A DNA stretch of 64,000 nt, taken from assembly GCA_964036045.1 (NCBI GenBank), contig OZ038378.1, forward strand, positions 9,238,001-9,302,000. Direction: 5' to 3'. How positions within the stretch are numbered: the stretch's first letter is position 1; each line of letters begins with the position of its first letter. The notes under the pieces were generated by a model. The model made no database searches, was not told the origin of the DNA, and worked only from the letters and a program-made list of their open reading frames with translations. The translations under genes were made by a program, and so were the position numbers. This stretch comes from Eutreptiella sp. 'Long Island Sound 2002' (Eukaryota; Protista; Euglenida). This document shows, piece by piece, positions 95 through 30,100 of this stretch.

Positions 95-2059
95 CTTTGG
101 TGCTCATCCACTCGACCACTCGGTTTTCACAAAGCATTCGCTTGCTGGACGTGGCCGTGTTCTCAATCAACCCCACCAGCCTCGGGTCCACCAAGATCTT
201 CTTCCCGGACTCTGATGGAATGTACTGCCACACCGTGTGCGCCAACTGCATCCCCTGCGTCGTCACTGTCCGGAGCAATCGGCTGTCCTTCACGCTGACA
301 ATCGTCCCAACTCCCGCCTCCAGCACTTCAACAAGCTTCTCATTGCCAGTGGCATTCTCCAATGCTACGCCGGCATTCTGCACTGCACCCACCAGAGTCT
401 CCAATGCCTTGTCTGCCCCTGAGACGGCACAAGAATACGAGCGCACAAACCAAGCCCCCAGCAACAAAGGCTGTAGAGGCCCCTGAAAAAGCAATATGGG
501 GTGAGTGGGGCAGCGGGGGCTCTTCCCACCCCTACTGCTTCCGCTGGAGGCGAGGAGGATCAGGCGGAGCGGTCACTTTGCACTAGGGGCCCCAACCATG
601 TCACACTCACCTGCACGCATGCATCCTGGACGGCCAGTGCTGCACCCCCTACAGCAGTTCAAGCCCCGAGTGAGAAGTCTGTTCAATGCAGAGCACATGG
701 AAGCGTCAGCAATGCATAAAACAGAGAGCAGGCTCATCAGTGATGGGTGTCCGGTAGCACCAGTGAGTCTGGCGTTGTTCGGTGGCCGGCACCATGCTGA
801 GCCCTGAGTCCATTGTCTGAGTCACAGCTGGGAAAGCGCGAACCCCCCCCCTCCCCCTCCCCTAGCACCCTGCACAGCCCAACGTGCTACTACAGCGCTC
901 CGCACCTCCCTATAGACTCGCACAGCGCTTGACAACCCCCACACATTCCTGCGCCACTGATACGCCTCCCGACGCACTCCTACAGCGCCCTACGCCTTCC
1001 CACGCTCTCCTACAACGCTCTAGGCCTCCAGATACATTGTCAGACAGGCATGCTGCCACCAGGGCACGACCGTGGTGCCGGGTGGAAGGGGTTTGGCCTC
1101 AGGTGGACAGCGTTTGGCTCTGAGCACCGGCACTGCAGACCGTCATACCTGCAGCCACACGCTCATCGTCCAACGTTGTTGCCAGGCTCTTGAGTCCATG
1201 GGAAAGCACCTCCCGAACGCGACTGTTCTCCAGTGCGTCCGATGTCAGCCGGAGGACGTTTGCTGCCGTACGGGTGATGAATGGGGTTTCCATCACCGTT
1301 GCACTGCAGCGCATTCCCATGGCCAAGGGGGCAGCGGCATTGTCAGCCTCCAGGGCCCGGCCCGCCAGGGAGATGGCAGGCACTGCGACTGACAGTACCC
1401 GCTCCGCCGCTTTGCCGTGCAGGATCGTCAGGACACGTGATCGGAAAGCACTCAGCTGCTCTCGGACATTGTACTCGTGCACATCAAATGGGGCCTCTTC
1501 AGGGGCATATTCCGGTGAAATTTTGCACATTCTGATCGCATAAACAGTGCCTGTGTAACGAGGCCAGGCAATACTTACGGAGCGCATGAAACGAGCCCCA
1601 GCAAGGTCTCCAGAGCAGAGAGGAGTAACATGACTACACAAAGTCTGCCACATTTGGGTCTCCAACTCGGAGAAGAGTACCGTGGCAAACCCCCGTCCCC
1701 CTTGTCCGAGCGGTAAAATGACCAAAAGATGCGGAAACAGCGCCCTATGCTTCGGACATGGCGCTGTTTGCGCGCAAGAGCACACGAGCGATACTGCAAT
1801 AGCCTTCAGCACTGAATCAGAAAGGAATGTTTGCCTCAGTCCATTGTCATTAGAAGAGAAACTGGCCTTAAGGGTCACATGCATGACCTGCCGGAGGGCA
1901 TGACAATTGGCATTGCCTTGCTGCAATCCCACTCCTGATTTGCAGAGACAAAGCCGTCGGGCTAATTGAGCTGCAACCCTCTGAATCCGGATATAGGACT
2001 CGTCATTGCCATGCGGGCTTTCTTCTCCAGAGGCTTCGCACAGCTCGGCAGAGTCTCTG
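95..2059 (-). CDS. Internal exons of an unidentified, probably alpha-helical protein; gene continues past the left edge
   Basis: Exon 95-418 has acceptor tctcag| and donor AAAG|gtggct (phase 1 at both ends). The upstream exon ends at 1149 with GCAG|gtatga (phase 1), splicing in frame to give ...ERVAA-G-ADKALETL.... That upstream frame is stop-free from about 2060 to 1149; its acceptor (about 2059 or 1934) is uncertain. No family recognised. Confidence 0.6.
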
Positions 2060-3872
2060 ATTTATGTAAGATCTGTCAGCATCAGCAAGAATTGGTGCAA
2101 GGCTGTGCAAGAGAATTAGTCACAAGAGAAGAGTAGTCCGACTGGCCCTTACTCTATCTAGGTTGGGGCCAGGCAGGAAAGGTTTGACATCCGCTTTAGG
2201 CTGTATAATGGAGCCCTTTGAGCGGCAGCAAGCAGAAGGTTCAACATGGCAAAAAAATGAGAACTCGGCCTTGGTGGTGCAGATACCACCCAAATTCTAT
2301 TGGATGGTACCTCAACTCCTTTTGGATCAATTTTCCTAATTCCTGGAACCAGACCCCTTAACTTGCCGTGCCCCATCATGGTCTTTTGTTTGGTGGGAGA
2401 GTTTGAATGTCCCTGTGCCACTTTAGGGACCTCAGGGGATTCAAATGCAAAGCACAACCAAAATCAGCGAAGTGTGCGGGAACCTCAATCTTCATCTCAG
2501 CTGACATAGAACCTTTGGCGGAAAGCTGGTGGTTGCGTGCTTGCTTTGCACAATCATCAGTGGCTCGAACAGATTCAGGACTGGCGAGCAGGTCCAAAAC
2601 TGAACATGCGGGTTTTTCTCAGATGCCTACCACCATCTTCATGATCTGTTGAAGCTTCATCATGGTCACTGCAGTGCAGCACCATTTCGCTGAAACAAGG
2701 TGGCTGCCAAAGTGCAGTCCTTTGCACCTTCTGCAGCTTGATGTGGCTGGATTTCAGATAGGGGCATTGGGGGTGGTGGGGGTGGCGGTGCATGGACTTC
2801 TACTCCGCCGACTGAAAGTGGCCCAGGGCACCAAAATTAGGGTGCAGTGCCAGATGGTTGTCAGAGTGGTTTTTAAAACAGGTTTGTGTCTTAAGCAAGG
2901 AGAGAAAACCAAACGAAGTAGCACCTGACCTTGGAGGCCCTTTGCAGTAGTGCAGGCATGAGGGTTGGGCAGTGCTCAACTGATGCCGGACCCACAGCCA
3001 GAGAAGGCTTGGGGGAATGCGGCTGCCTTCAATGTACAGTCCCAAATCCCTCACATCGCCGGCCACTGGCCAGCAGAGCAGGACCTATGGTGAGGCAATC
3101 GTTGGCGGGCTGTCCAGCCATGGTCACCTTGGTCGTGGCAATGGGCCCTAGTAGTGCAGCCATATGATCTACGTGAGAAGACACGGAGTGCCTAATGATG
3201 GCGATGATCTCAGTTTCCACTTGGTTGACAAACATGGGTGAGTCCCTGAGCTGCGATCCCTCCCCCCCCCCGAGACACACATGAAAATATGGAGAAACTG
3301 AAAAGGGGAATTTACATACACAGCACACCCCTCTTCCTGTACCCCAAACTTCAGTTTCTGGTGAAACTTCTAATTTGTTTCGTTCTAATCTGGAACTGGC
3401 TAGATTAGATTGAGTCCTCTGAAAGGCGCCAAGGGTCCCTTCAGGATGACACACAACATGACCACTGGCCACATATCCCAACCTAGACTTTCACCCAGTG
3501 CCGCCGGCTCCTCTGTTTTATGTTCCTATTCGTCCTCCTTTTGGGCAAACACTTCGTGCACACCTTTAAGGTATTGTTTAATTGGCCCCAACCCCAAATT
3601 GCTCGCAGACTGATCTGGACAACAACATGGTGTTCAACCTTGTAGAAGCTGTCCAAGAGGTCAAACCTACTAGGAGCATTGTTGTTCTATGCTTCACTAG
3701 AACTTCCGTAGGCAGCGGAGGGTGTTGGATGAGGGCTGACTGAGCCGCTTCCAAAACATTGGAGGTTCTCTGCCAATAGGCCTTCCAACGCCAACCCATC
3801 TGGCATCTATGTCTGCCTTTGAGCTCATTGTCAGGTAGCAAAAAAAATGTGAATTACAAAAGGACTCACCCA

Positions 3873-4362
3873 GGGGGAATCTTTGCACTGCGCGCTACTT
3901 TTAGACTATGTTCCCCCCGAAGAGCCCCCAAGCACACCCCTTGGAAACGCCCTTAGAATTAGGTGACCCAAACTGCCCCAGCTTTCCTCATGTACATGGA
4001 GCAACATCTCCAGGTGAATGTTCGAGGTTCATCGTTTTGCTTGTTTCTTGGCCTCTCTCTCTCTTTTCTCACGGCGCAAACGGTCAATCTCAGGCTGCAG
4101 TGTTGGCGCTTCACTGCCGCCTTCAGGGAATGGTTGGCCATCAAGCCCATGCTGGATAATTACACTTTCCTCATCCCTTGGTAAGTGGTTACCCTTGCCA
4201 AACCGCAAGACTTGCTCAATCACCTTTGGCGCACCCGTGACAGGTTGCTCCGGATACTTTGGGCGCTCCTTGCGGGCCCCTAGTATCTCAAAGTATGGGT
4301 TTCTAGTACGGCCAGACGCCCAAATAGTTGCACGGCGCGCGCACTGCGCTTAAGGCTCCCCC
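3873..4362. mobile_element. Non-autonomous element, GGGGG...CCCCC family, copy 1
   Basis: Left ~110 bp (GGGGGAATCTTTGCACTGCGCGCTACTTTTAGACTATG...) nearly identical to 38415 onward. Right ~70 bp (...TAGTACGGCCAGACGCCCAAATAGTTGCAC..CGCGCGCACTGCGCTTAAGGCTCCCCC) shared with the other copies. Flanks cca/cga, an imperfect 3-bp TSD. Confidence 0.85.
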
Positions 4363-9600: not shown

Positions 9601-12600
9601 ACATCAAGCGCTGGTGTCCATTTGCTGTGGAGCTTCTCTAATAATTCTCAGTTACGTACGGACAACTGTATAAATCCAACAACACCTCCTGATACTTGCC
9701 TCCCTGCTGCCAATACTGTTACCCCTTTGTGGGCTTTCTGTTGAAAACGAGAACTCCGTTGGCCCCGGAATTGCCTGCGCAGTCCAAAATACATTGTGAG
9801 AACCACATCTCAAAGAAAGTAGAGGGCCAGAGGGCCAGTAACAGGAGACAGCTGCGGTATGAACTCGTTGGAGAGTGCACGAAGGCACATGGGGCTGGCC
9901 CAGCATATGCCCACCAGTTTTGTTTGGAAGTGGGAAGTGAGGAGGACGAAATTGATCTGAAAAAAGGCAGGCGAAACGTCTTTTCAGTCGTTGAGGAGAC
10001 AACAGCAAGAACTAGTCGACAAAACGCCGGGGGGGGGGGGGGGCACCGAAAGAGGAAGCAACGCCTTCAACACGCTGTGATGAGTTTCGGAATGATGCAG
10101 CACTGATCCCGCCTCCCGTTAGCGCAGGTCAGGCATCATGCAAATGCCCTCAAGAGTGCAAGAAGTGGATGAGTGGACAGGGGAAGATGGTTTGACGCAA
10201 AGCATCAGCCCCATGCCAACACGAAGACCAGCACGGTCGCGCACCTGCTGCTGCTGTGGCTGCGGGCTCCCTTGCGTCTGCGGTGCACTTGGGACATAAT
10301 TCAAAGGATTCGCCCATGTGCCGGCCCAACTGACCCATCCCCAGAGTCCAGCACCATCGGATTGTGGAGGGTTGGCAGGTTTGGACTGTGCCACCTGATA
10401 ACATGCAGCGCAATTGGATGCAAGTTTGGAAGGTGCACGCCGAGTGAGGATGGCAAAACTGGAAGCCCGACCACAAATGCAGCCAAAGAACGCTTTTTTA
10501 TGACCTATAAAAAAAAGCAATGGGGCTGTCCGGAAGCTAGCTCATAGCCAGCCTGAAGGGCCGGTCCGAATTTTCTGAGGAAATGGCTGGTGCGCCAGGC
10601 AGGAAGCCGGTTAGCCAGAAATACGTCGGTTGGGTATGGAGTGTGTTTACTATCAAAACAACAATGCCTGTCCTCGAGAAATGCCCTGTGGGACATCCGG
10701 AATCCCAACAAATCATGTCACCACACATGGAAGTCGGTCAAGTGGGAGTTGCTGGAGCGCTATGTCCGTCACCAAGCGGCATTTGCTGCAATGAATGGGC
10801 ACCTACAGACCCATAACGAGGAAGAAGACCCCAACGAGTACGAGGGCCCACTTCTTTTGAATGTATCCAGCCTCTACTTTCTCCAGATCTCAATGCCCAG
10901 CTGTTGGGCCTAAGCCAGTTTTCTCTGCATACCCTTGTGTCACTCTGCCAAATGGGCCAATGGTAGTCAGAAAAGGCATTCACCACAACCTGACACACTC
11001 CGAACAGGGGTGAACAGTGGCAGACTACATCCCCTCTACAACATCCTCTCCTCCTGTGCTTTGCCACAGGCGCCTACAGTGAGGCACCGTGTGAGTAACC
11101 ATGAGTGTCATCTGGCCCCGGCAAGGAAAAAGGGCACATTGATACATCTGTTGGATACCTTCTGAGGAGGCGCAGCGGACTGGGTGCAAATGCACACCTT
11201 CCTAGTGTGATAAATTGAACTTGTGTACAAAAAAATCTTCCGTGCGAGGAATTTTTGTTGCGGTAAGGTTGACTAATTTTTTTTGCAGTTGTTTGAAAGG
11301 AAAATCGGAATACTTCCCAAAAAAAAATTGTTGGTGCACGTAATTTTTTTTGTGGTAAGGTCCTGTAATATTTTTTTCATGTAAAAGCAAGTACAACTTT
11401 TTTTTTCAAAATAATACCTCTTTTTTTTTCTTGCATTGTGCACAATTGCCGGTTCCGTACGGCGCCCTATAGCGACCTTAACGATGGGGCGTTGAGTCCA
11501 AAAAACACAAAATACTCTGTGTGGCCACCAATTAATTGGGACTCCGCCAATGTGGAGGTCCAATGGAGGTTTTTGTGGAGGTAGGACAGGGCGACTTGTG
11601 GTGGAGTAGCACAACCTTCCGAGCTACCAAAGAGCATTAGGTAGCTTATACACTCCACTAGAAAAGGGCAACATTTTTCACACACCACCTTTGGTGCACC
11701 AAATAGGAGGAGAAACTGCAAGAACGTGAAACGCCTGCACATAGTGCACACTACGGAATGCACGTTTGTAGATGAGATCAGTCTTTGAATCGGAGGACTT
11801 GGGCTTTGCACCAAGAAGGGCCACGGACAATTTCAAAGGGGTGGCTGAGACTCATACCCCTCCTACCTCACCCTCCAGCACCCAAGTTCAGGGCGCACTT
11901 TCTGAGACCCAAGACAATGTCCAAGCAAGCCCCACCCCACTAGAAGGCAAGGATGCCTACTCCAAGCGAAGCATGGAAGCCTCAGAGTCCAAGGGGCAAC
12001 TTGCCATGGCCACTCCTACCATAGAGGAGGACAACCATCAACACCCCACATGCCGGATTGTGACCCCAAAAATACATCCGGCTAGCTGGAGTGTGATCAG
12101 CAGTTCATCAGTGAGCTGACCATGCGGCCGAAAAGTAAGTTGTATGAGGCGGAGCACCGAATGCTCCGCATAGAGCGATCAACATTGACGATGCTCAACA
12201 CATAGTTCACAAAGCCTAGAAGCATTGGGGTGGCGCACATCTACAAAGGAACCACGGTGTTCAACTACCTGGTTTGTGATGTGTAGGCTCTAAAGACCAG
12301 AAGACCAACCGCCCTTTTCAAATACCAAGGCCCAGTGCTTGGTCATAAAATCAAGCTGCTTGAGCTCCGCTAAGAAAAGGCATACCAAAGCAGTTGAGCT
12401 CAAGGGCCCCCAAACCCAAACTGGGAGACGGTCCAACCAGATACAACAATTCATCCCGGGATCCCCAAAGCGAGGACGAAATCAAAAATAGCTACATAAC
12501 CTCTAGTGTCTTGAGGACCCACATGTGGGCAAAAACGACTACATAATCCCTACTGTCTTGGGGGTTCCCAAAGCGGGGACGAAATAGGAAAGGGTGAGTG

Positions 12601-21100: not shown

Positions 21101-22490
21101 ACATTGTGCCAAGCGAGGCTCCAAAATTGCCTCCACAAACAATTGAAATGCGGCAATTGGCAAAGCAACGGGTGGAGACATGAAGAAGTCTTTGCGGCGT
21201 CTAAGGCCTTTGCGGTGACGACACATTCCATGACGGCATAGCAACCAATCGTACACAAAGGGAGGGCGAGTAACATGTACCCGCGCGGAGGTCAATGGCC
21301 ACAACCCTATTGCTCATTGCCATTGAACAAAAGTCCGGATCTTCGAGATGTTTGCGTACTTCGGGGATGGCGTCACCCTCGCCACCCAAGAAGACAAGCA
21401 ATATTCCGTCCTTTTGTTGGACTTGAGCGATGGCAGCGCTCACATTATTGTCGTCGAAGAAACCTAATGAATTAGCGCGAATGAATTAGCGCATCATGTC
21501 GACGGCGACATAGTAGTGTGCATCGTAAAGTGGACACATATCTCATTGCCGAGGAAGCATACCGGACATGAAGGATTGCGTTGTTGCAACGGGCAGCAAA
21601 GATCACACGACAACAACCGAAAAAAGTCTGCATGGATATGAAGCACCGCGAGCACGAGTTCGAGAGAACCGCGAGAAGACATAGGAAAGGCAAAGGCATG
21701 AGATGATCTCCCGGTGGACGATGTCTTTCACCCTAAACTAGGTCCATGCAACTAATTGATCATGTTTGATGCGAGGGTGACTTGTTTAGGTTATAAGTGC
21801 ACTCATCAGCAAACGAACTTGTTTGTGGTGTGGGCCCATGGCATTGGAGGACAGGTAGCCCATCGAAACATCTCCCCTTCGCACCGAGAAAGACCATGAT
21901 CCCTCAGACGTCCCCCCAAAAACCCGCTTAACGCCGTATCGGGACCCACGGCAAAGGGGAGGGACTTTTTTTTTCGAGCACGTTGTATGGCAACCGGTTT
22001 GGGGGCATGGGGATGTTAGGTACGCCATTCCGTTCCGCATGAAATCCCATATCCTAAATACCCCCCCCCACCCCCCCCCAATTGGCACGGAACGGTTTTG
22101 GGCCAAAAAAGAATACCCCGCCCCCCCTGTCCCGTACTGGTCCCCCGGGACCCAACCCGAGGGATGTGTTAGAAGAAATGTGCAACGTAAAAGTAATCAA
22201 TAACCAATGCAACGTCTTGAAAACTCGGCCCCCCAAGAGCCCCGTCCTGCGCCTTTTTGTTTGGGCTCGAACATGGGGCCCCATAGTGTCACCCATTTGT
22301 AGTGTTCTTGATGATGTGATCAATTGCATGTCAGACCCTTTCCCAAAGGGCAAGGTCAAACGCTGCTGCATGGTATGTCAACACTTGCCGACGATGTATT
22401 TCGCAAAGGGGCCGGACTGGTGCACCCCCTTCACGCGCCAGCTTCTGCAACGCAAGCACACGGTTCACATGCATTTTGCATGGCCTTGTA

Positions 22491-23619
22491 CCCTTCGTGA
22501 ACGGGGTTAAGCGGCTGTTTGAATGGCAAATTCGATTCACGTGAATTTGACCCATTTTTTGAGTTTTTTTTTTGAGATAACACTACATTTTGGCTTCAAT
22601 ATGACGTATCTGATGGGGTAAACCTCAGGACCCATTTTCAGTCCCCATGATGCAGTGAAAGTCCCGCCCCAAACGGACCCCTAACGCCCAAACGGCGCCC
22701 AAAAACAATCCTGGCAACATTTACGGTAGACTTGGGCATGAATTTGCGAAAATCGTACGAATTTCGCACCAAATTCGTGCGAAATTCGTGCGAATTTGGC
22801 AGATTCGTACGAATTTCGTGTGAATGTCGCGCGCGCTGCCTGCGAACTTCACCAGAATCCCCAGATGCGTACAGCAGAATGTCCAATAATGTCCCGGCCG
22901 AAATCAAGCCAATTGGGACATTACAAGACTTTTCGGCCACCCACATGGGACGTTCCGAGACTTTCCTTTTTGGGCTGGTTGGAACCATTTGGAACATTAC
23001 AAGACTTTTTTCCGGGACATTGACACACTTTTTGGTCGAAGATGGATGGAAAATTCTCCTCTGGGCGCGTTGCGCCCGGTTTCTCCCTCCCCCCATGTTG
23101 ACTTGGGTGGTGTTGGTTTTTGGGAAAACTTGTCTTCCAGGCGCTTCGCGTCATGTTTTTATCTCTCCCCCCCGTGTTGACCAGACCATTTGGGCCATTA
23201 GTAGACTTGTCCCAAGACGTCAGAATGTGAAGTATTGGGACATTACGAGGGCCATTTGGGACATTACCGAGACTTTTTTCTGAGACATTATTGGACATTT
23301 TACTGTACGAAATTCGCACGAAATTCGTACCAATGTCCAAAAAGGCCAAATTTCAGCAGAAACTAACTCGAATTCGCGCGAATTCGTGTATGCTTGAATT
23401 TCATAAATTAGTGTTGCGTTCACGGTAACCGAGCCGAATATTTGCAACCTACCAACAAGGTAAAACATCAAAGTTCAAGACATTTCTAGCGACAACGTTT
23501 TGGCGAAGATAGCACGAGAAACACACACGATGGAGCCAAGTTACGAGCAAAACACAGCAAAAAGTTCTCAAATTCACGCCTCCGTGAATCTCCCATTCAA
23601 ACGGCCGCTTCACGAAGGG
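22491..23619. mobile_element. Non-autonomous TIR DNA transposon with TA target duplication
   Basis: TA|CCCTTCGTGAA at the left and TTCACGAAGGG|TA at the right; the imperfect inverted match extends ~60-70 bp. The interior has inverted arrays of AATTCGYRCGA-like motifs (22750-22820, 23305-23390) and TTGGGACATTAC repeats. No credible ORF. Confidence 0.8.
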
Positions 23620-23959
23620 TACACTCTTGCCCTCTGTCACGTAGGCGTTCACCGCCGCCACAAAGTGTTAGATAGAGAGGCGAGTTTTCAGGACGATAAT
23701 CGTTAGATGAATATCAGCGGCCTCTAGCCCCTAGCTCATTGTGGCAAGCCCCGAGTGTGAGGTTGCAACCAAGGGGAGGAAACGGTAGGGAGCAAGCACT
23801 AGCAACAAGACATGGGGGAATCCGGTACTGGCTTTGAGTATAAACTGAGTTATCACGCTACTTGTGGTGATGGGTACCGGTCTCTTTCAGCGAGAATCGA
23901 ATGTGTGGCATTCCTATAATGACATGGTTGCCAAGCAAAATTGATGGTCAATAGTCAAA

Positions 23960-25650
23960 TTACTCGCGACAACAAGGACCCACACCATCTTCCACTTTCA
24001 TGGTAGAAGTAGACGAGGTGGCATAAAAGCAAGACTCATGGTAAGGTGCATTGCACACTTTGCACTGAATGCGGGCACCACCACGCAAGGGGCCAAACAA
24101 AAATCTCACGCGAACACTTGGAGCACGTATTCTCCCGTGGCACTTAGGGAAGAGTTGAGGACGAAGACACGGACATGCCTTGGAGGATACCGTGGGCGAC
24201 GCATTCGCTTGAATGGTTGTGGTACAATGGACAAATCCTGATTGACTAGGGCTCCCTCGGGTGCTGGCGGGACCTCCCAAGTCGCGGTCCTATAAATTTC
24301 ACGGGCTTCCTCGAGGGAACGCTTGAGGGAGGGCTGCGTGAGAGGCCGTTCATCATAATCCCACTCACTATCATCCTCATTCAAAGACTTTGCCGAGTTC
24401 TCCTCCTCAAGGAGATCTACAGACACACCACTCAAAGACCCCAAGGATGAGCAAATAGAAGCAGGTGAGGCATACACATCTTTGCCAGGCGATTCCGCCC
24501 CCACAAGCACAAACTCACGCAAAGAACCCAACGATTCACACAACGAGGATTGTGAATTACGAACTTCTTCAGGAAAAGGAGCAATTGTAGCCACAACGTC
24601 GGCATTGTTTTCGGCAATGCCGAGGGAAGTTCCTTCCAAAAGGAAGTCACCGTCCAAGAGGCCAAGCCCCTTGGCGTTAGATGACACAGTCTCATCTTCA
24701 TGAACATCATACCGGCTCAATAAGTTTGCAGCCTTGATAGGGGTATCAAGGGCAGCACGATGGTACACCTCCCACGTTTTTTGGGCAACACCCAAATATT
24801 TGGCTGCATCGGCCAAACTAACCTCCGAGTTGGCAAGTTTTGTGAATACTGGACGCCTACCAATATCTTTCATTGTTAAACCGGGACGTTCAAGCAATTG
24901 CCCTACCCAATTTGCTGTTCCACGGTAGACTCCGTACCCTGCTCGCTTACCTTCTTGCACGGAATTGCTAAGTGGATTGAGGAAGTGGAACAAGGGCCCT
25001 TTAGTCTTGAGTGGGCTCATGCTTGCCAATTTCTGAAACCACCAAATGGCACAAAATCGATGATCTTCGCACTGAGCCACACGTTGCTTGAACAATGCTG
25101 TTTCTACTTTATCCAGTGAGGCAGCAAGGTTCTTCATTGTTCCAACCACAGGTTGTAGATATTTTTCCCCACCCGCTACAATAAGAGTCCAATTTTCAAA
25201 GGGTGTCGCCACGGAGACCCGTGCGGAAGGCTAAAATTGCCATACCCATCCTTTGGACTTCATAAAGGGAATCAAAATTTGTATTGTTCCAAAGCAAGGG
25301 GAGTTCGCGATCTTGCAATATCTCAAAGGCCGCAGCATCTTTGGTAGCTTCTTTAATGGCCACCAATCCACGGTGAATGGTCACACACCCACGCATGAAA
25401 GCATTAAACTTTGGAAATTGCATTGTGGAGGAAAATGAAACCTTGGTTGTCCGACCCGATTGATTGTACATGACCGCAAGGCCATTCACATAGGTTCGCA
25501 TGGGCAAAGGACTAATACTACGAAGAGCCTTAGCATCCCCACTAAACTCCTCGCGCTTTTTAAGAATTCGCTTCTGCTGTTCTTCGTCTTGTGTAATGGT
25601 GCGAACATCGATGACGAATTTTGCGAATTGCTCGAACCATACATCTACAA
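23960..25650 (-). mobile_element. Frameshifted Crypton-like tyrosine recombinase with a C-terminal PHD finger
   Basis: Frame A (25650-25196): FAKFVIDVRT...PMRTYVNGL (Crypton N-terminal-like) and box I LAFRTGLRGDTL. Frame B (25212-24106): GTMKN, TMKDIGRRPVFTKL, YLGV, VYHR, then an acidic linker. Frames C/D (about 24125-23960): CSKC ... IQCKVCNAPYHESC ... PCC, a C4HC3-like PHD pattern. Three frameshifts in total. Confidence 0.8.
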
Positions 25651-25821
25651 ATATTTGGCTGCATCGGCCAAACTAACCCTCCAGCTCGCAAGTTTTGTGA
25701 ATACTGAAACTGAAATTGCAAAGGTGGCCCAAATGGTTCAACAACATTGTGAGTGGTGTTGCGTGCTTTTTTGGAATTTGGGGGATAATTTTTCCCATCC
25801 AACAGTTTTAACGCTGTGGGA

Positions 25822-26245
25822 TTGAAGGAAGCACCTGCACTGCACACGCTGACTTTGTATCTTTTATGCGACAGCTTGGGAGACAGTGGTGCGCAGGCGC
25901 TTTGCAGGTTTGAAGGAAGCACCTGCACTGCACACTCTGACTTTGGATCTTTGTGACAACAACGTGGGAGACAATGGTGCGCAGGCCTTTGCAGGTGCAG
26001 TCTGAATTTGGATCTCTGTGACAACAACGTGGGAGACTGTTGTGTGCAGGCCCCCTGCACTCCGCACTCTGACTTTGGATCTTTGTGACAACAACGTGGG
26101 AGACAGTGGTGTGCAGCGCTTGCAGGTTTGAAGGAAGCACCTGCACTGCAAACTCTGACTTTGCATTTTTTACGCAACAGCTTGGGAGACAGTGGTGCGC
26201 AGGCCCTTGCAGGTTGGAAGAAAGCACCTGCACCGCACACTATGT
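25822..26245 (+). pseudogene. Degenerate tandem array of 84-nt (28-aa) ribonuclease-inhibitor-type LRR units
   Basis: Units read LKEAPALHTLTL(Y/D/H)xxxNx(L/V)GDSGAQALAG. About 5 units, two internally deleted, with frameshifts. Confidence 0.8.
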
Positions 26246-27065: not shown

Positions 27066-27157
27066 GCAGGGTCAGTTCATCGGGACGGAGAGGATAATAG
27101 TGGGGGTAGGCAACGCGAGACGTAGTGGTGGGGTGCCTGTTTCCCGTTCTATCACAG

Positions 27158-30100
27158 ACGATGGACTCCTTCCGCAAGGCTTGCAGGGATCTCCCTCTCA
27201 GACGGTCCACCCATGTATTATCGCAGTCGGCGGATGCCTTCCTGAAACCCTGCGGTGCGCCCCACCGACGGTCCACCAGCGACGTCATCCCATCCATCGT
27301 CGTGGGCCTGCCTGGCTCCGACGGGGACTTCACCAAAAGCATGTGCCAGTGGCTTGGCACCGACGCACACTGCCCGGCCCCTCGGAAACGAGTCCGCTTC
27401 GCCGTGCTCGTGTCGTCCCGGCCCGGCACCGCGGACTCCGCTGCAGAGTCCGCGAGGCCCACCACCCCACGCTCGGTGCCGCTGCCCCCTCCCACCCTCC
27501 CGCACATCGCCCGCCTCCCCATCGTCGCGGGCCGCCCAGAGCACGCCGCCAGTGCCACGATTCCGAACATGGGCACTCCGCGGACCCTCCTCGACGACTT
27601 GCCGGAGCATCCGGACACGCCGTCCGCCGACCGCACGGCGCTCGCGGGGCTCCAGGCGGTGGATTTCTCCCCGCTGCTGCAGCACAAGCGCCGGCAGTGG
27701 CTGTACGGCAGTCGGGAATGGGCCTTCGACCAAATGGACGAGTGGCTCGCGGAGGAGGAGGCCGCCCGCATGTTGTGGCTCGTCGGCCGCGGCGGGACGG
27801 GCAAGACCGTGGCACTGGCCGTGTGGCTGGACCGCGTCGCCGCGCAGCACGGGGCCGTGGCCGTGGCCTGCCACTTCTGCGACACGCCCGCCCACCGCCG
27901 CCCCGCCGCGCTGCTGGCGTCGCTGTCGGCGGCGCTGTGCCGCCACGTGCCGGGCTACGCCGCGCAGCTGGACACCCCGGCCGTGCGGAGCGCCCTGGCC
28001 GCCGGGGCACCGGCCGAGCTCGTCCGGACGCTGTTCGTCGAGCCGCTGCAGCGGGTCGCCCCGCCCTTGCGGGGCCCGCTGCTGCTCTGCATCGATGGCC
28101 TCGACGCCCTCGACGCGCCGGAGCCGCACGCCGCGTGGCTGGGGCTGTTCGCGGCGCTGCCGCCGTGGGTGCGCCTCGTGGTGACGTCCCGCAACGACCC
28201 CGACCTCCGCCGGGCCCTCCAGACGTTCGAGCCGGGCGCGCTGGAGCTGGAGGGCCCGCTCCACCGCGCGGACCTGCGGGCGTACCTGCGGGCGACCGCC
28301 GAGCGGTACGTCCGCGGCGACCTCCCCGCCGCCGCCCTCGAGGCGCTGGTGGAGGAGGAGTTCCCGCCGCTGAAGGGGGCGATGGCCGGGCATTTGCAGG
28401 AGCTCGGCCGTGCGGAGGGCCCCGCCCTCGACGCGCGGCTGCGGTACGCGGCCCAGTGCCCAACGCCGGGGCCCGGGGGGCCGGCAGGCCCCGCCGCCGT
28501 CCGCGCGTTCCCCCGGCAGATCTGCCGGGACGCGGGCGTCAACCCCGACGAAGTGGAGGAGTTCGTCGCGGAGCAGCTCCGGTCGTCGGCGGCGGACGCG
28601 CGCGCGCGGGCGGTGCGGCTGCTGGACCGGAAGGCGGACGGCCTCTTCGTGTACGCGGCGTTGGTGGCCGGGCTGCTTGAAGCGGAAGCGGAGGCCGGGC
28701 GGGTCCTGGACTTTGCGGGCATCGCGCGTCTCCCGCGCGGCGTCCCTGACCTCTACATGACCCACTTCCAGAAGGCCTTTCCGGAGGGTGTCGCAGGTGT
28801 TTGCTCGGGAATCCCCTGTTTGCTGCCACGTACGCCTCGGGGCGCCGCAACGCCGTACATTGGATTGCGGTCAAGAGCGCTGTTCTCTCCGCGTGTTGGG
28901 AAACGCGCCGAGGCCTGTGCACTGACTTGTTGTCCTCAAACCGGGCTAAACACGCCGGGCCTCCAAACCCCAACCGCGAGCAAACTCACGGCCTCCGGTT
29001 GGGGCGCGGATCCCCCTAATTCAGCAACAGTCAGAGTGTTGTTTCTTTTTGGTGCGGTGCTGTTCTCGGTTCACAGTGCTACAGCGGCGGCAGAGCTGGC
29101 TGCCCACTCCTCACCGCTTTTTTTTTTACCCACCCCCTTCACCCCCAGGGCACCCAACCCACCTATTGACGCGTGGAGGATTCCCTCCTCAAAAGGCGAA
29201 CACACACGTACACCCGGAAGTACCAACTGGCATACTCACTCAGCCTCGTGGCACCCTCCCTCCCCCACTGTTGGCACACGCCGGTATGTTGTTCCGCACA
29301 AGTGTTTTTTTGGTACATGACAATGTGGTGAACGAGGCGGTTACGTGGCGGTTTGGCGAGGCGGGCGGGTAGCAGGAATTGACGGGCGTCGAGTCTGGGT
29401 TCGGGCACCGGTCTGTTGCGCTCGTTGACATGGTCCACGCAGACCGGACACACTGCAAGGGCAGGTGGCGGCAATGGGTTCCGCCAGCTTCAGACAGCAA
29501 TACAATCCGGCGTCATGCCAAACGTGTGCACCACACACACCCTTCAGGAGCACCGCAGTTCGTGGTCAACGATGGTAATCGCGGGTCAGCAATCTGCAGG
29601 GACTCGCCCACGCCGTAGTCGCAGTTGCGGCATGCGCAGTGCGTGCCATCTCTTTTTGGGTCAGCACCGCCAACCCTAGTCCGTTTTGAGCTATTTCCCC
29701 GCAACCAATGGCCAAGCCTTTTGGCCTCAGTGTCCCTCTCGGCGTCTGATGGGGCGACTCAACCGGGAGAATGGGGCGCGGCGCACCGTGTGCAAGTGGC
29801 GCACACGATATGCACTTGTCGGGGCAAACAAACGGTTGGGAAAGGCTGCATGGCCATGGGCGCCGAACAGTGGGCGTCGGTCGCCAGATTGTTGCAGACC
29901 GCCGCCGCCGCCCTCTCCGCAATACCCTCAAACGCCACCGAAATCCCTGCGGGCCAGGCAGGTGGAAAATTGGCTTGCACAAGGGGGGCGGGGTCGTTCG
30001 AGCCCGCGGAAGGAGGGGGTCCGGGGGGTCTGGAAAGGGGGCTCTCGTGACAGGCAGTCCAAGAACGCTAGTCAAAACACTAGTGATGACTCACCACCTG

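What the first reader, a model, noticed from the sequence alone, without database searches (positions are those of the whole stretch)
23960..25650. Crypton-like tyrosine recombinase ending in a PHD finger, with an atypical catalytic signature
Seen: joining three frameshifts gives a Crypton-style N-terminus (FAKFVIDVRT...TYVNGL), box I TGLR, GTMKN, KDIGRR, YLGV, VYHR, an acidic spacer, and CSKC...CKVC...HESC...CC. Established: tyrosine recombinases use R-K-HxxR-H/W-Y; Cryptons are eukaryotic YR-only DNA transposons, and the C-terminal addition I know of is GCR1_C in some groups. Inference: both His positions are replaced here (DIGR for HxLR, LGV for LGH), and the C-terminus looks like a chromatin-reader PHD finger. 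That could be an undescribed Crypton lineage that reads histone marks when choosing targets.
Basis: partly seen in the sequence, partly recalled or inferred. Interest (0 to 1): 0.8.

Follow-up and report, generated by a model that had tools for sequence, protein, structure and literature searches.

The report
Decayed recombinase jumping gene with PHD finger
This is a broken copy of a small DNA jumping gene from a marine euglenid alga (Eutreptiella); its single protein is a Cre-shaped tyrosine recombinase that lacks both usual catalytic histidines and ends in a PHD-type zinc finger, and its roughly 250-cluster family has no name in the databases and papers I could search.

Summary
Window 23662-25810 (minus strand) is a pseudogenised, end-shortened copy of a 2.55-kb element. 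Intact copies in the same assembly encode one intronless 652-aa protein.

- **Fold.** The AlphaFold model (pLDDT 91) matches Cre over both domains (Z 19.8, 295 residues). No sequence profile (Pfam, PDB) recognises it as a recombinase.
- **Active site.** About 250 related clusters keep Arg, Lys, Arg and Tyr. None keeps a His at either canonical position: the motifs are K-D-[IV]-[AG]-R-R and G-V. This is a family trait, not local decay.
- **PHD finger.** The C-terminal finger passes Pfam's PHD threshold in relatives. It is degenerate in the window's subfamily, where the last Cys pair is "CC".
- **Ends.** These are not Crypton-like in the strict sense. The 5' terminus recurs inverted near the 3' end, followed by a 125-nt terminal hairpin palindrome with compensatory changes between subfamilies. 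In two other loci, tandem arrays start inside that palindrome's spacer.

Best reading: an unnamed lineage of recombinase-only DNA transposons, "Crypton-like" only in the loose sense. Histone reading and target choice remain untested. I did not find this family among the scan's earlier notes.

The parts
23662..25810 (-). Whole surviving copy of the element. It equals L001 9926-12257 of a 2.55-kb full element (L001 9834-12376) and lacks about 92 nt at the 5' end and about 119 nt at the 3' end.
   Evidence: blastn and alignments against intact copies; 96.9% identity
25704..25810 (-). 5' leader beginning with TTAAAACTGTTGGATGG, an internal second copy of the element's 5'-terminal motif. It also holds the remnant of the first ATG region.
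25648..25706 (-). 59-bp filler copied from the element's own recombinase region (about 24794-24852). It replaces a 266-bp deletion (L001 10032-10297) that removed the start of the reading frame.
25199..25645 (-). Frame piece A: the N-terminal (core-binding) domain and the start of the catalytic domain up to box I (AFRTGLR, Arg-I). It ends at a TGA stop followed by a 14-bp deletion.
   Evidence: fold model
24175..25190 (-). Frame piece B: the rest of the catalytic domain (GTMKN Lys, LF, W, KDIGRR, YLGV, VYHR Tyr), the acidic/Ser-rich linker, and the conserved DSEWDYDERPLTQ and VNQDLS..PF motifs.
24144..24174 (-). 31-bp insertion relative to intact copies. It causes the second frame shift.
   Evidence: the same skip is seen in run contigs (joint 24141>24173)
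23963..24143 (-). PHD-type zinc finger (CSKC .. CKVC-x4-H-x2-C .. CC), split by a 2-bp deletion at 24091/2. The stop codon is at 23960-23962.
23662..23729 (-). 3' inverted copy of the 5'-terminal region (TIR-R), containing the motif CATCTAACGATTATCGTCCTGAAAACTCG. The copy ends here, just before where full elements carry the 125-nt hairpin.

Best explanation
The locus is a dead, shortened copy of a 2.55-kb DNA transposon of the euglenid alga Eutreptiella.

The live element has one intronless gene of 652 aa, laid out as follows:
- a conserved N-terminal stretch
- a Cre-like two-domain tyrosine recombinase
- an acidic/Ser-rich linker with two conserved linear motifs
- a PHD-type zinc finger

Shown here:
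- The recombinase fold.
- Family-wide conservation of Arg-I, the beta-hairpin Lys, Arg-II and the Tyr nucleophile.
- Family-wide absence of both pentad histidines.
- Several near-identical copies, with two intact genes.
- Structured ends built from five copies of a roughly 29-nt motif: an inverted pair around a 12-nt spacer at the 5' end, and an inverted copy of the 5' terminus followed by a 125-nt hairpin palindrome at the 3' end. The motif co-varies between subfamilies.

Inferred:
- The recombinase binds these motifs and moves the element by site-specific breakage and joining, probably through an excised intermediate, with strand exchange in the spacers.
- Another residue (K363, D364 or H399) takes over the role of the missing histidines.
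- The PHD finger tethers the enzyme to chromatin.

Both ends of the window copy fall on copies of the terminal motif TAAAA[C/G]TGTTAGATGG (one internal, one inverted). This suggests the enzyme, rather than random deletion, made those ends.
For: - **Intact relatives and architecture:**. A second 652-aa copy (P0168) is in the same 90%-identity cluster as P0002 (not aligned here).
- **Fold:** AF2 pLDDT 91, pTM 0.81. Foldseek's top 28 hits are Cre or its engineered variant Tre, with E down to 1.6e-6. VIA gives Z 19.8, rmsd 3.6 A, 295 residues, both domains. The Atlas fold search returns bacterial integrases and a DUF3504/ZMYM2-like cluster, TM 0.63-0.66. Language-model neighbours carry Phage_integrase.
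- **Catalytic mapping:** hhalign to P1 Cre gives R244=R173, K275=K201, R368=R292, V390=W315, Y398=Y324. Lambda Int confirms Arg-I.
- **Conservation:** R244 102/107, K275 94/108, R367 85/92, Y398 74/82, K363 74/93, D364 69/90, V390 64/83, H399 68/80.
- **Family size:** 248 clusters.
- **Recent copies:** 99.5-99.7% identical.
- **Ends:**. The hairpin has dG -49 to -52 kcal/mol and z -13 to -15. 10 of 49 pairs carry compensatory double changes.
- **Tandem arrays:** their unit starts in the palindrome spacer in two loci.
- **Tolerance of His loss:** Cre H289 substitutions keep activity, and the third pentad position is the least conserved (PMC4381057).
- **Host identity:** an L31e fragment on the same contig as L001 clusters at 90% or more with Eutreptiella.
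Against: - No direct evidence of mobility. No empty site, excised circle or clear target-site signature was found, and the terminal A-runs are too trivial to count as Crypton-type direct repeats.
- No sequence profile recognises the recombinase: Pfam Phage_integrase scores at best about 14 bits against a cut-off of 27.1, and a PDB profile search finds no recombinase.
- The segment around the tyrosine also scores weakly as a helix-turn-helix (HTH_23, HTH_17).
- A Val at the fifth pentad position has no precedent that I could cite, so activity is inferred from conservation and copy history only.
- The RNA evidence is weak. Metatranscriptome contigs are at depth 2-7 and one covers non-element flank, so DNA carry-over is possible.
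- The PHD model of the window's subfamily has only moderate confidence (pLDDT 70.5), and its Foldseek hits are not significant.
Confidence: 0.8

Rival explanations
1. The 2.55-kb unit is a non-autonomous, RT-less derivative of a tyrosine-recombinase retrotransposon (DIRS/Ngaro/VIPER-like) and moves through RNA with reverse transcriptase supplied in trans.
For: - Earlier notes of this scan report gag-YR-RT elements and gag+YR fragments in the same genome (not checked here).
- The inverted terminal/subterminal repeats loosely recall the DIRS layout.
- A gag-like CCHC zinc-knuckle ORF sits in the 1190-bp tandem units next to one copy.
- Relatives are often found on short contigs, and parts of the element occur in metatranscriptomes.
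Against: - No RT, RNase H or gag lies inside the element's defined ends in six copies from three subfamilies.
- The same RT-less single-gene layout recurs in distant relatives on 2.3-3.5-kb contigs.
- The gag-like unit lies outside the element, after its 3' end.
Confidence: 0.07
2. The family is a domesticated or catalytically dead recombinase-derived DNA/chromatin-binding protein, like DUF3504 in ZMYM2/QRICH1. The segment around the 'tyrosine' is then simply a helix-turn-helix.
For: - Both pentad histidines are absent.
- Weak HTH_23/HTH_17 matches over AAKYLGV..T..VY.
- A PHD finger suits a chromatin protein.
- A DUF3504/ZMYM2-like cluster is among the nearest folds.
Against: - Arg-I, Lys, Arg-II and Tyr are conserved at 89-96%. 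DUF3504 proteins have lost the Tyr and the second Arg (PMC3212892).
- The gene is multi-copy, with pseudogenised, internally deleted and near-identical copies at unrelated loci.
- It is framed by conserved, co-varying repeat structures.
- The putative HTH region folds as the two C-terminal helices of a Cre-type catalytic domain.
Confidence: 0.04
3. The shortened ends of the window copy, and the tandem arrays beside other copies, come from ordinary palindrome instability (replication slippage or hairpin breakage), not from the recombinase.
For: - Long palindromes are known deletion and duplication hot spots (general knowledge).
- The flip/flop of the loop in L002 versus L006/L007 could be a one-off hairpin-loop inversion.
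- The L005 array junction lies mid-loop rather than at an arm boundary.
Against: - Both ends of the window copy fall within 1-2 nt of copies of the same 16-nt terminal motif.
- Two independent arrays in two subfamilies both begin in the spacer.
Confidence: 0.3

Closest known systems
Crypton DNA transposons (CryptonF/S/A/I; Goodwin 2003; Kojima & Jurka 2011, PMC3212892)
   Same: A eukaryotic DNA element whose only enzyme is a tyrosine recombinase, sometimes with a C-terminal accessory DNA-binding domain. It has no RT and no LTRs, and is about 2.5 kb with a single gene.
   Different: - It lacks the R-H-R-Y histidine.
- It carries a PHD finger instead of GCR1_C.
- It has a 55-70-nt inverted repeat (5' terminus versus 3' subterminus) plus a 125-nt terminal hairpin, where Cryptons have no TIRs and 4-6-bp terminal direct repeats.
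- It has no Pfam DUF3504 or Phage_integrase match.
- Kinship with any Crypton group was not tested. Kojima & Jurka themselves note that the four groups may be of independent origin.
Cre recombinase of phage P1 and Xer-type simple tyrosine recombinases
   Same: The same two-domain fold over 295 residues (Z 19.8). Arg-I, the beta-hairpin Lys, Arg-II and the Tyr nucleophile align. The 5' site has inverted arms around a spacer, like lox or dif.
   Different: - About 10-13% identity.
- His289 and Trp315 are replaced: by I/D (or K one or two residues upstream) and by V.
- One residue fewer between the fifth pentad position and the Tyr.
- The arms are 28 nt and the spacers 12-18 nt, against 13 and 8 in loxP.
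- It has an extra N-terminal stretch, a long linker and a PHD finger.
PHD-finger-bearing transposases (for example Ginger1, PMC2836005) and chromodomain integrases of chromoviruses
   Same: A chromatin-reader module fused to the C-terminal side of the integration enzyme, which is taken to bias target choice.
   Different: Those enzymes are DDE transposases or integrases. I found no paper describing a PHD finger on a tyrosine-recombinase transposon. The PHD here lacks the cage Trp in most members.
Integron integrase IntI with attC sites
   Same: A tyrosine recombinase paired with imperfect palindromes that can fold as hairpins. Head-to-tail units each end in the same site next to the recombinase gene (L005, L007).
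   Different: This is resemblance only. The repeated units keep only the right arm of the palindrome, there is no evidence for single-stranded substrates, and the IntI fold match (Z 14.1) is weaker than the Cre match.

Membership tests
Tyrosine recombinase superfamily | Two-domain fold: core-binding domain plus catalytic domain | tested here: met
   AF2 model pLDDT 91. Cre Z 19.8, rmsd 3.6 A, 295 aligned, model residues 27-401. The top Foldseek hits (all those with E <= 0.001, and all 50 listed) are tyrosine recombinases.
Tyrosine recombinase superfamily | Arg-I, beta-hairpin Lys, Arg-II and Tyr nucleophile | tested here: met
   hhalign to Cre gives R244=R173, K275=K201, R368 (or R367)=R292, Y398=Y324. 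Each is conserved in 89-96% of family members.
Tyrosine recombinase superfamily | His at the third pentad position (HxxR) | tested here: not met
   The family motif is K-D-[IVCL]-[AGS]-R-R with no conserved His. The aligned residue is I365 or D364 by spacing.
Tyrosine recombinase superfamily | His or Trp at the fifth pentad position | tested here: not met
   V390 aligns with Cre W315. Val occurs in 64/83 members, otherwise I, L, M or C.
Tyrosine recombinase superfamily | Pfam PF00589 Phage_integrase above the gathering score | tested here: not met
   Best 13.9 bits against a cut-off of 27.1. Only 5 of 26 members score at E <= 0.1. The window pieces give no hit.
Crypton | DNA element encoding a tyrosine recombinase and no reverse transcriptase | tested here: met
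   A single ORF lies within the defined ends in L001, L004, L002, L006 and L007.
Crypton | No terminal inverted repeats or long repeats | tested here: not met
   L001 9834-9902 is the inverse of 12193-12262 (89% over 72 nt, with a 35-nt perfect core). There is also a 125-nt terminal palindrome. The extreme ends themselves are not inverted copies of each other.
Crypton | 4-6-bp direct repeats at both termini matching the target | tested here: inconclusive
   The ends read T|AAAAG... and ...AGAAA| in five or six copies. An A-run is too simple to judge, and no empty site was available.
Crypton | R-H-R-Y catalytic tetrad (PMC3212892) | tested here: not met
   R, R and Y are present; H is absent.
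Crypton | Recombinase groups with CryptonF/S/A/I in a tree | not testable with these tools
   No reference Crypton sequences were available to me. No member matched Pfam DUF3504. A DUF3504 cluster matches by fold no better than bacterial integrases do.
PHD finger (PF00628) | C4-H-C3 spacing and a Pfam score above the cut-off | tested here: inconclusive
   Met in relatives: P0045 29.7 bits and P0030 30.2 bits against a cut-off of 24, over the full profile 1-47. The window's subfamily scores 13-18 bits and its last Cys pair is contracted to 'CC'. In the fold search PHD fingers rank first, but E >= 0.13.
PHD finger, H3K4me3-reader type | Cage tryptophan two residues before the His | tested here: not met
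   It is present only in P0045 (GGWFH). The window's subfamily has NAPYH, and other members have V, A or T there. The position is taken from my own knowledge of BPTF/ING2.
DIRS/Ngaro/VIPER retrotransposons | RT and RNase H in the same element | tested here: not met
   No such ORF lies within the element ends.

The most novel reading that the evidence does not exclude
This is a new superfamily of eukaryotic recombinase transposons, with three distinctive properties:
- Its enzyme works without either pentad histidine.
- It recognises long hairpin-forming palindromes, possibly as folded DNA.
- It captures or amplifies neighbouring DNA as head-to-tail units at its 3' site (an integron-like behaviour in a eukaryote), while the PHD finger steers it to a particular chromatin state.
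Probability: 0.15. Interest if true: 0.85.

Novelty: new variant of a known kind. Interest (0 to 1): 0.66.

Why it matters
- **Enzymology.** Tyrosine recombinases are defined by an R-K-H-R-H/W pentad plus Tyr. Here a family of about 250 clusters, apparently active, keeps R, K, R and Y but neither histidine. That gives enzymologists a natural test of what those two positions are for.
- **Transposon biology.** It adds a recombinase-only DNA element from Euglenozoa, with end structures (inverted subterminal repeat plus terminal hairpin) unlike the Crypton definition. I could find no earlier description of a PHD finger on such an enzyme. That makes chromatin-guided integration by a recombinase a testable idea.
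- **Annotation.** The family escapes Pfam and PDB sequence profiles, so it is invisible to current annotation. One member sits in GenBank as a "Genlisea aurea" hypothetical protein.

Tried and rejected
- **Pfam on the four window frame pieces:** no recombinase hit, only a sub-threshold PHD/C1 match.
- **PDB sequence profiles** built from 5 and from 150 sequences: no recombinase. The only hits were chance ones (gp41 mimetics, TCR alpha) and a weak excisionase-type HTH.
- **HTH reading of AAKYLGV..T..VYHR:** considered because of the HTH_17 and HTH_23 scores. Rejected as the main reading because the segment models as the last two helices of a Cre-type catalytic domain and the Tyr aligns with Cre Y324.
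- **C1 domain for the finger:** best Pfam score in the window's subfamily was 20.8-22.9 bits, below the cut-off. Rejected in favour of PHD because relatives pass the PHD cut-off.
- **hhalign to lambda Int:** aligned only box I, so it did not resolve the third pentad position.
- **Word search with the C-terminal 133 residues:** found only the same subfamily.
- **A possible remnant of the 3' hairpin 1.4 kb further on** (window 22218-22240): only 23 nt match and the rest does not align.
- **Other searches that returned nothing:** Rfam and tRNA scans of the window; TRF for the 1.19-kb array, whose period exceeds TRF's limit, so blastn was used instead; a search of the scan's findings by sequence; literature searches for Crypton+PHD and Crypton+Euglena.
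- **No repair.** I did not repair the window's frameshifts or build a consensus. Intact natural paralogues were used instead.
Full report
**What is in the window**

tblastn of the pieces against the window finds no second copy. The only extra match is a 59-bp duplicate of the VSLADAAKYL segment at 25648-25706. Pfam gives nothing for the recombinase-like pieces and only a sub-threshold PHD/C1 match for the last piece.

**Intact relatives**

A word search with the longest piece found ten proteins.
- P0002 is 93% identical, 652 aa, and encoded by one uninterrupted ORF (L001 10001-11959) on a 3.99-Mb contig of ENA assembly ERZ25074135.
- A second 652-aa copy (P0168) lies on another contig, in the same 90%-identity cluster.
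- A subfamily at about 50-60% identity (P0004, P0005) is in the same assembly.
- P0009, at 46% identity, comes from a different sample.
- All of them keep RTG[LF]R, GTMKN, KD[IV][AG]RR, YLGV, VYH[RQ] and the C-terminal Cys/His pattern.

A ribosomal protein L31e fragment on the same contig as L001 clusters at 90% or more with Eutreptiella gymnastica/braarudii sequences. This independently agrees with earlier notes of this scan that the genome is a marine euglenid.

**Damage in the window copy**

Global alignment with L001 gives 96.9% identity, plus the following lesions:
- a 14-bp deletion at about 25187
- a 9-bp in-frame insertion at 24576-24584
- a 31-bp insertion at 24144-24174
- a 2-bp deletion at 24091/2

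In addition there is a TGA stop right after TGLRGDTL. A 266-bp deletion (L001 10032-10297) removed the start of the gene and was patched with 59 bp copied from the element's own recombinase region. I did not repair anything; the intact natural paralogues made that unnecessary.

**Is it a tyrosine recombinase?**

A profile of the core found 248 clusters in the 1.84-billion-protein library. Nearly all are unnamed and on short environmental contigs. One is filed as a Genlisea aurea hypothetical protein, EPS58297.1, which is probably a contaminant of that carnivorous plant's assembly.

With 150 of these sequences as the alignment, AlphaFold2 gave a confident model of P0002 residues 13-425 (pLDDT 91, pTM 0.81).
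- Foldseek's top 28 PDB hits are Cre or its engineered variant Tre, followed by XerH, Tn1549 Int, XerA and IntI.
- VIA-align gives Z 19.8, rmsd 3.6 A over 295 residues spanning both domains.
- The ESM Atlas fold search returns bacterial integrases and a DUF3504/ZMYM2-like (Crypton-derived) cluster at similar TM scores of 0.63-0.66.
- Language-model neighbours carry Phage_integrase and ALOG.

By sequence the family is very remote. Profiles against PDB find no recombinase, and Pfam Phage_integrase reaches only about 14 bits.

**Active site**

hhalign of the family profile against P1 Cre (taken from AF234172) gives this mapping:

| Family residue | Cre residue |
|---|---|
| R244 | R173 |
| K275 | K201 |
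| R368 | R292 |
| V390 | W315 |
| Y398 | Y324 |

Lambda Int confirms Arg-I.

Conservation across the family:

| Residue | Conserved in |
|---|---|
| R244 | 102/107 |
| K275 | 94/108 |
| R367 | 85/92 |
| R368 | 73/92 |
| Y398 | 74/82 |

Around the third pentad position the motif is K363 (74/93), D364 (69/90), a hydrophobic residue at 365, [AGS], then R-R. There is no histidine. hhalign places I365 opposite Cre H289, HxxR spacing from R367 would place D364 there, and K363 is a third candidate. Without the coordinates I cannot decide between them.

The fifth position is Val in 64/83 members. A histidine directly after the tyrosine (H399, 68/80) is a further family feature.

The literature says the third position is the least conserved and that Cre H289 variants still recombine (PMC4381057). 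Prokaryotic subgroups with Tyr there are known (PMC8138268). I found no precedent for Val at the fifth position.

The weak HTH_23/HTH_17 scores over AAKYLGV..T..VY are explained by the helix-loop-helix that carries the tyrosine in all such enzymes.

**The C-terminal finger**

In the window's subfamily the pattern is CxxC-x17-CxxC-x4-H-x2-C-x17-21-CC, and Pfam scores stay below the cut-offs (PHD 13-18 bits, C1_1 up to 22.9).

More distant members have the canonical C4HC3 pattern. These include P0011, P0030/P0162 (a 707-aa full-length protein with the same overall layout), P0045 and P0067. P0045 scores 29.7 bits and P0030 30.2 bits against a PHD cut-off of 24.

A model of the C-terminal 133 residues has moderate confidence (pLDDT 70.5). 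Its best PDB neighbours are mostly PHD fingers, but the matches are not significant.

In a maximum-likelihood tree of 29 members, the PHD-bearing proteins sit on both sides of the midpoint root and in the basal polytomy. Two well-supported clades (7 and 12 rows) lack the extension. This fits an ancestral PHD with later losses, but the tree has no outgroup and some short proteins may be truncated gene calls.

Two linear motifs before the finger are conserved with it: D-x-[WF]-D-[YH]-[DE]-x-x-PLTQ, and A-P-A-x-P-x-G-x-x-V-x-QDLS-x-x-P-x-PF. Only P0045 has the cage tryptophan expected of an H3K4me3 reader. What the finger binds is unknown.

**The element and its ends**

Six copies from three subfamilies share homology from L001 9834 to 12376 and diverge outside it. 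The element is therefore about 2.55 kb. It starts T-AAAAGTGTTAGATGG and ends ...GAACGATTATGTAATAGAAA. The flanks are unrelated to each other and there is no convincing target duplication.

A roughly 29-nt motif (CATCTAAC-NN-TTATCG-N-CCTGAAAACTCG) occurs five times.
- At the 5' end, two copies face each other across a 12-nt spacer. The spacer core TCTCGC[GA]G is shared by the subfamilies.
- L001 9834-9902 recurs inverted at 12193-12262.
- The last 125 nt form a long palindrome with a 14-18-nt central spacer. As single-stranded DNA it has dG -49 to -52 kcal/mol and z -13 to -15.
- Across five sequences, 10 of its 49 pairs show compensatory double changes, for example GTTAGATG, GTTACCTA and GTTAACAC with their partners.
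- The central spacer of L002 is the exact reverse complement of that in L006/L007.

A distant relative (L009) also begins with two strong hairpins. Another (L010) begins with six direct copies of a 15-nt motif.

These ends do not fit the published description of Cryptons, which have no TIRs and carry 4-6-bp terminal direct repeats (PMC3212892).

**Ends of the window copy**

Homology to the full elements starts at L001 9926 and stops at 12257.
- Position 9926 is the first base of an internal second copy of the terminal motif (TAAAACTGTTAGATGG).
- Position 12257 is within one or two bases of the outer end of the inverted copy (..CTATCTAACACTTTT).

The window copy is therefore bounded by two inverted copies of the terminal motif. 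I read this as a hint that the recombinase, acting at alternative sites, produced these ends. Palindrome-driven deletion is the alternative.

**Arrays beside the 3' palindrome**

- In L005 the element is followed by three head-to-tail 1190-bp units (99% identical). Each ends with the right arm and tail of the palindrome, and the unit boundary lies inside the spacer.
- In L007 the same is true of 1853-bp units (99.9% identical), with the boundary at the left-arm/spacer edge.
- The L005 unit encodes a gag-like protein with two CCHC knuckles.

Two independent arrays starting in the spacer fit strand exchange there, but they do not prove it.

**Expression and abundance**

Contigs of three estuary metatranscriptomes cover much of the element at 90-100% identity. 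One contig is identical across the filler and into the flank (25700-25850). Depth is only 2-7 and DNA carry-over cannot be excluded.

In the best-holding run (library type not on record), collapsed contigs over the recombinase region have roughly ten times the depth of neighbouring single contigs, and the 3' half has more still. This suggests about ten recombinase-bearing copies and more 5'-deleted ones, but it is a rough reading.

**Comparison and verdict**

Functionally the element is a recombinase-only DNA transposon, the class called Crypton. It fails three of the listed Crypton features: the histidine of R-H-R-Y, the absence of inverted repeats, and clear short terminal direct repeats (this last is inconclusive). 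Its kinship to Crypton groups could not be tested.

I found no description of a tyrosine-recombinase transposon with a PHD finger and no Crypton report from euglenids. Earlier unchecked notes of this scan list PHD fingers on several unrelated transposon families of this genome, so acquiring a PHD finger may be a recurrent habit of its mobile elements.

I rate this a new variant of a known kind, with good interest for recombinase enzymology and transposon classification. The chromatin-targeting idea remains a hypothesis.

Noticed in passing
L005:5291-8859: Three head-to-tail 1190-bp units (99% identical) directly follow the element's 3' end. Each ends with the right arm and tail of the element's terminal palindrome, and the unit boundary lies inside the palindrome's spacer. 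The unit encodes a 135-aa protein with two CCHC zinc knuckles (gag-like).
   Followed up: partly
L007:5520-9155: A second, independent array follows the element in another subfamily: 1853-bp units (99.9% identical). Each ends with spacer, right arm and tail, and the boundary is at the left-arm/spacer edge.
   Followed up: partly
L002:7848-7974 versus L006:5393-5519: The 18-nt central spacer of the 3' palindrome is present in both orientations: the L002 spacer is the exact reverse complement of the one in L006/L007 (flip/flop).
   Followed up: partly
window 25648-25706: A 59-bp templated filler, copied from about 24794-24852 of the same element, bridges a 266-bp deletion. This looks like the footprint of an end-joining repair.
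   Followed up: yes
window 22240-23661: The DNA next to the element's 3' end is a very high-copy repeat. In run X1 its summed contig depth is 15,000-43,000, against 300-4,000 for the element. Its ORFs repeat a NVP-containing motif. At 22218-22240 a 23-nt stretch matches the element's palindrome arm, but nothing around it aligns.
   Followed up: partly
window 25816-26230 and 27125-29320: On the other side of the element lie broken RNI-type leucine-rich-repeat units (LTLDLCDNNVGDSGAQA). Further on there is a 731-aa ORF with a P-loop (GRGGTGKT) of NACHT/STAND appearance, inside a block of 60-67% GC. This may be an NLR-like gene or pseudogene that the insertion sits beside.
   Followed up: no
L010:1-240: A PHD-less relative has six direct copies of CTGAATTTCGTGTTA[TC] upstream of its gene. 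These are likely recombinase-binding repeats, of a different design from the window's family.
   Followed up: no
L009:1-130: The contig of the 707-aa relative (P0162) starts with two strong hairpin palindromes (dG -40 kcal/mol, z -10.6) just upstream of the gene. Hairpin ends are therefore shared by distant members.
   Followed up: partly
P0017 (GenBank EPS58297.1): The only family member with a public name is a 'Genlisea aurea' hypothetical protein on a 1.9-kb contig. It is probably a protist contaminant of that plant's assembly.
   Followed up: no
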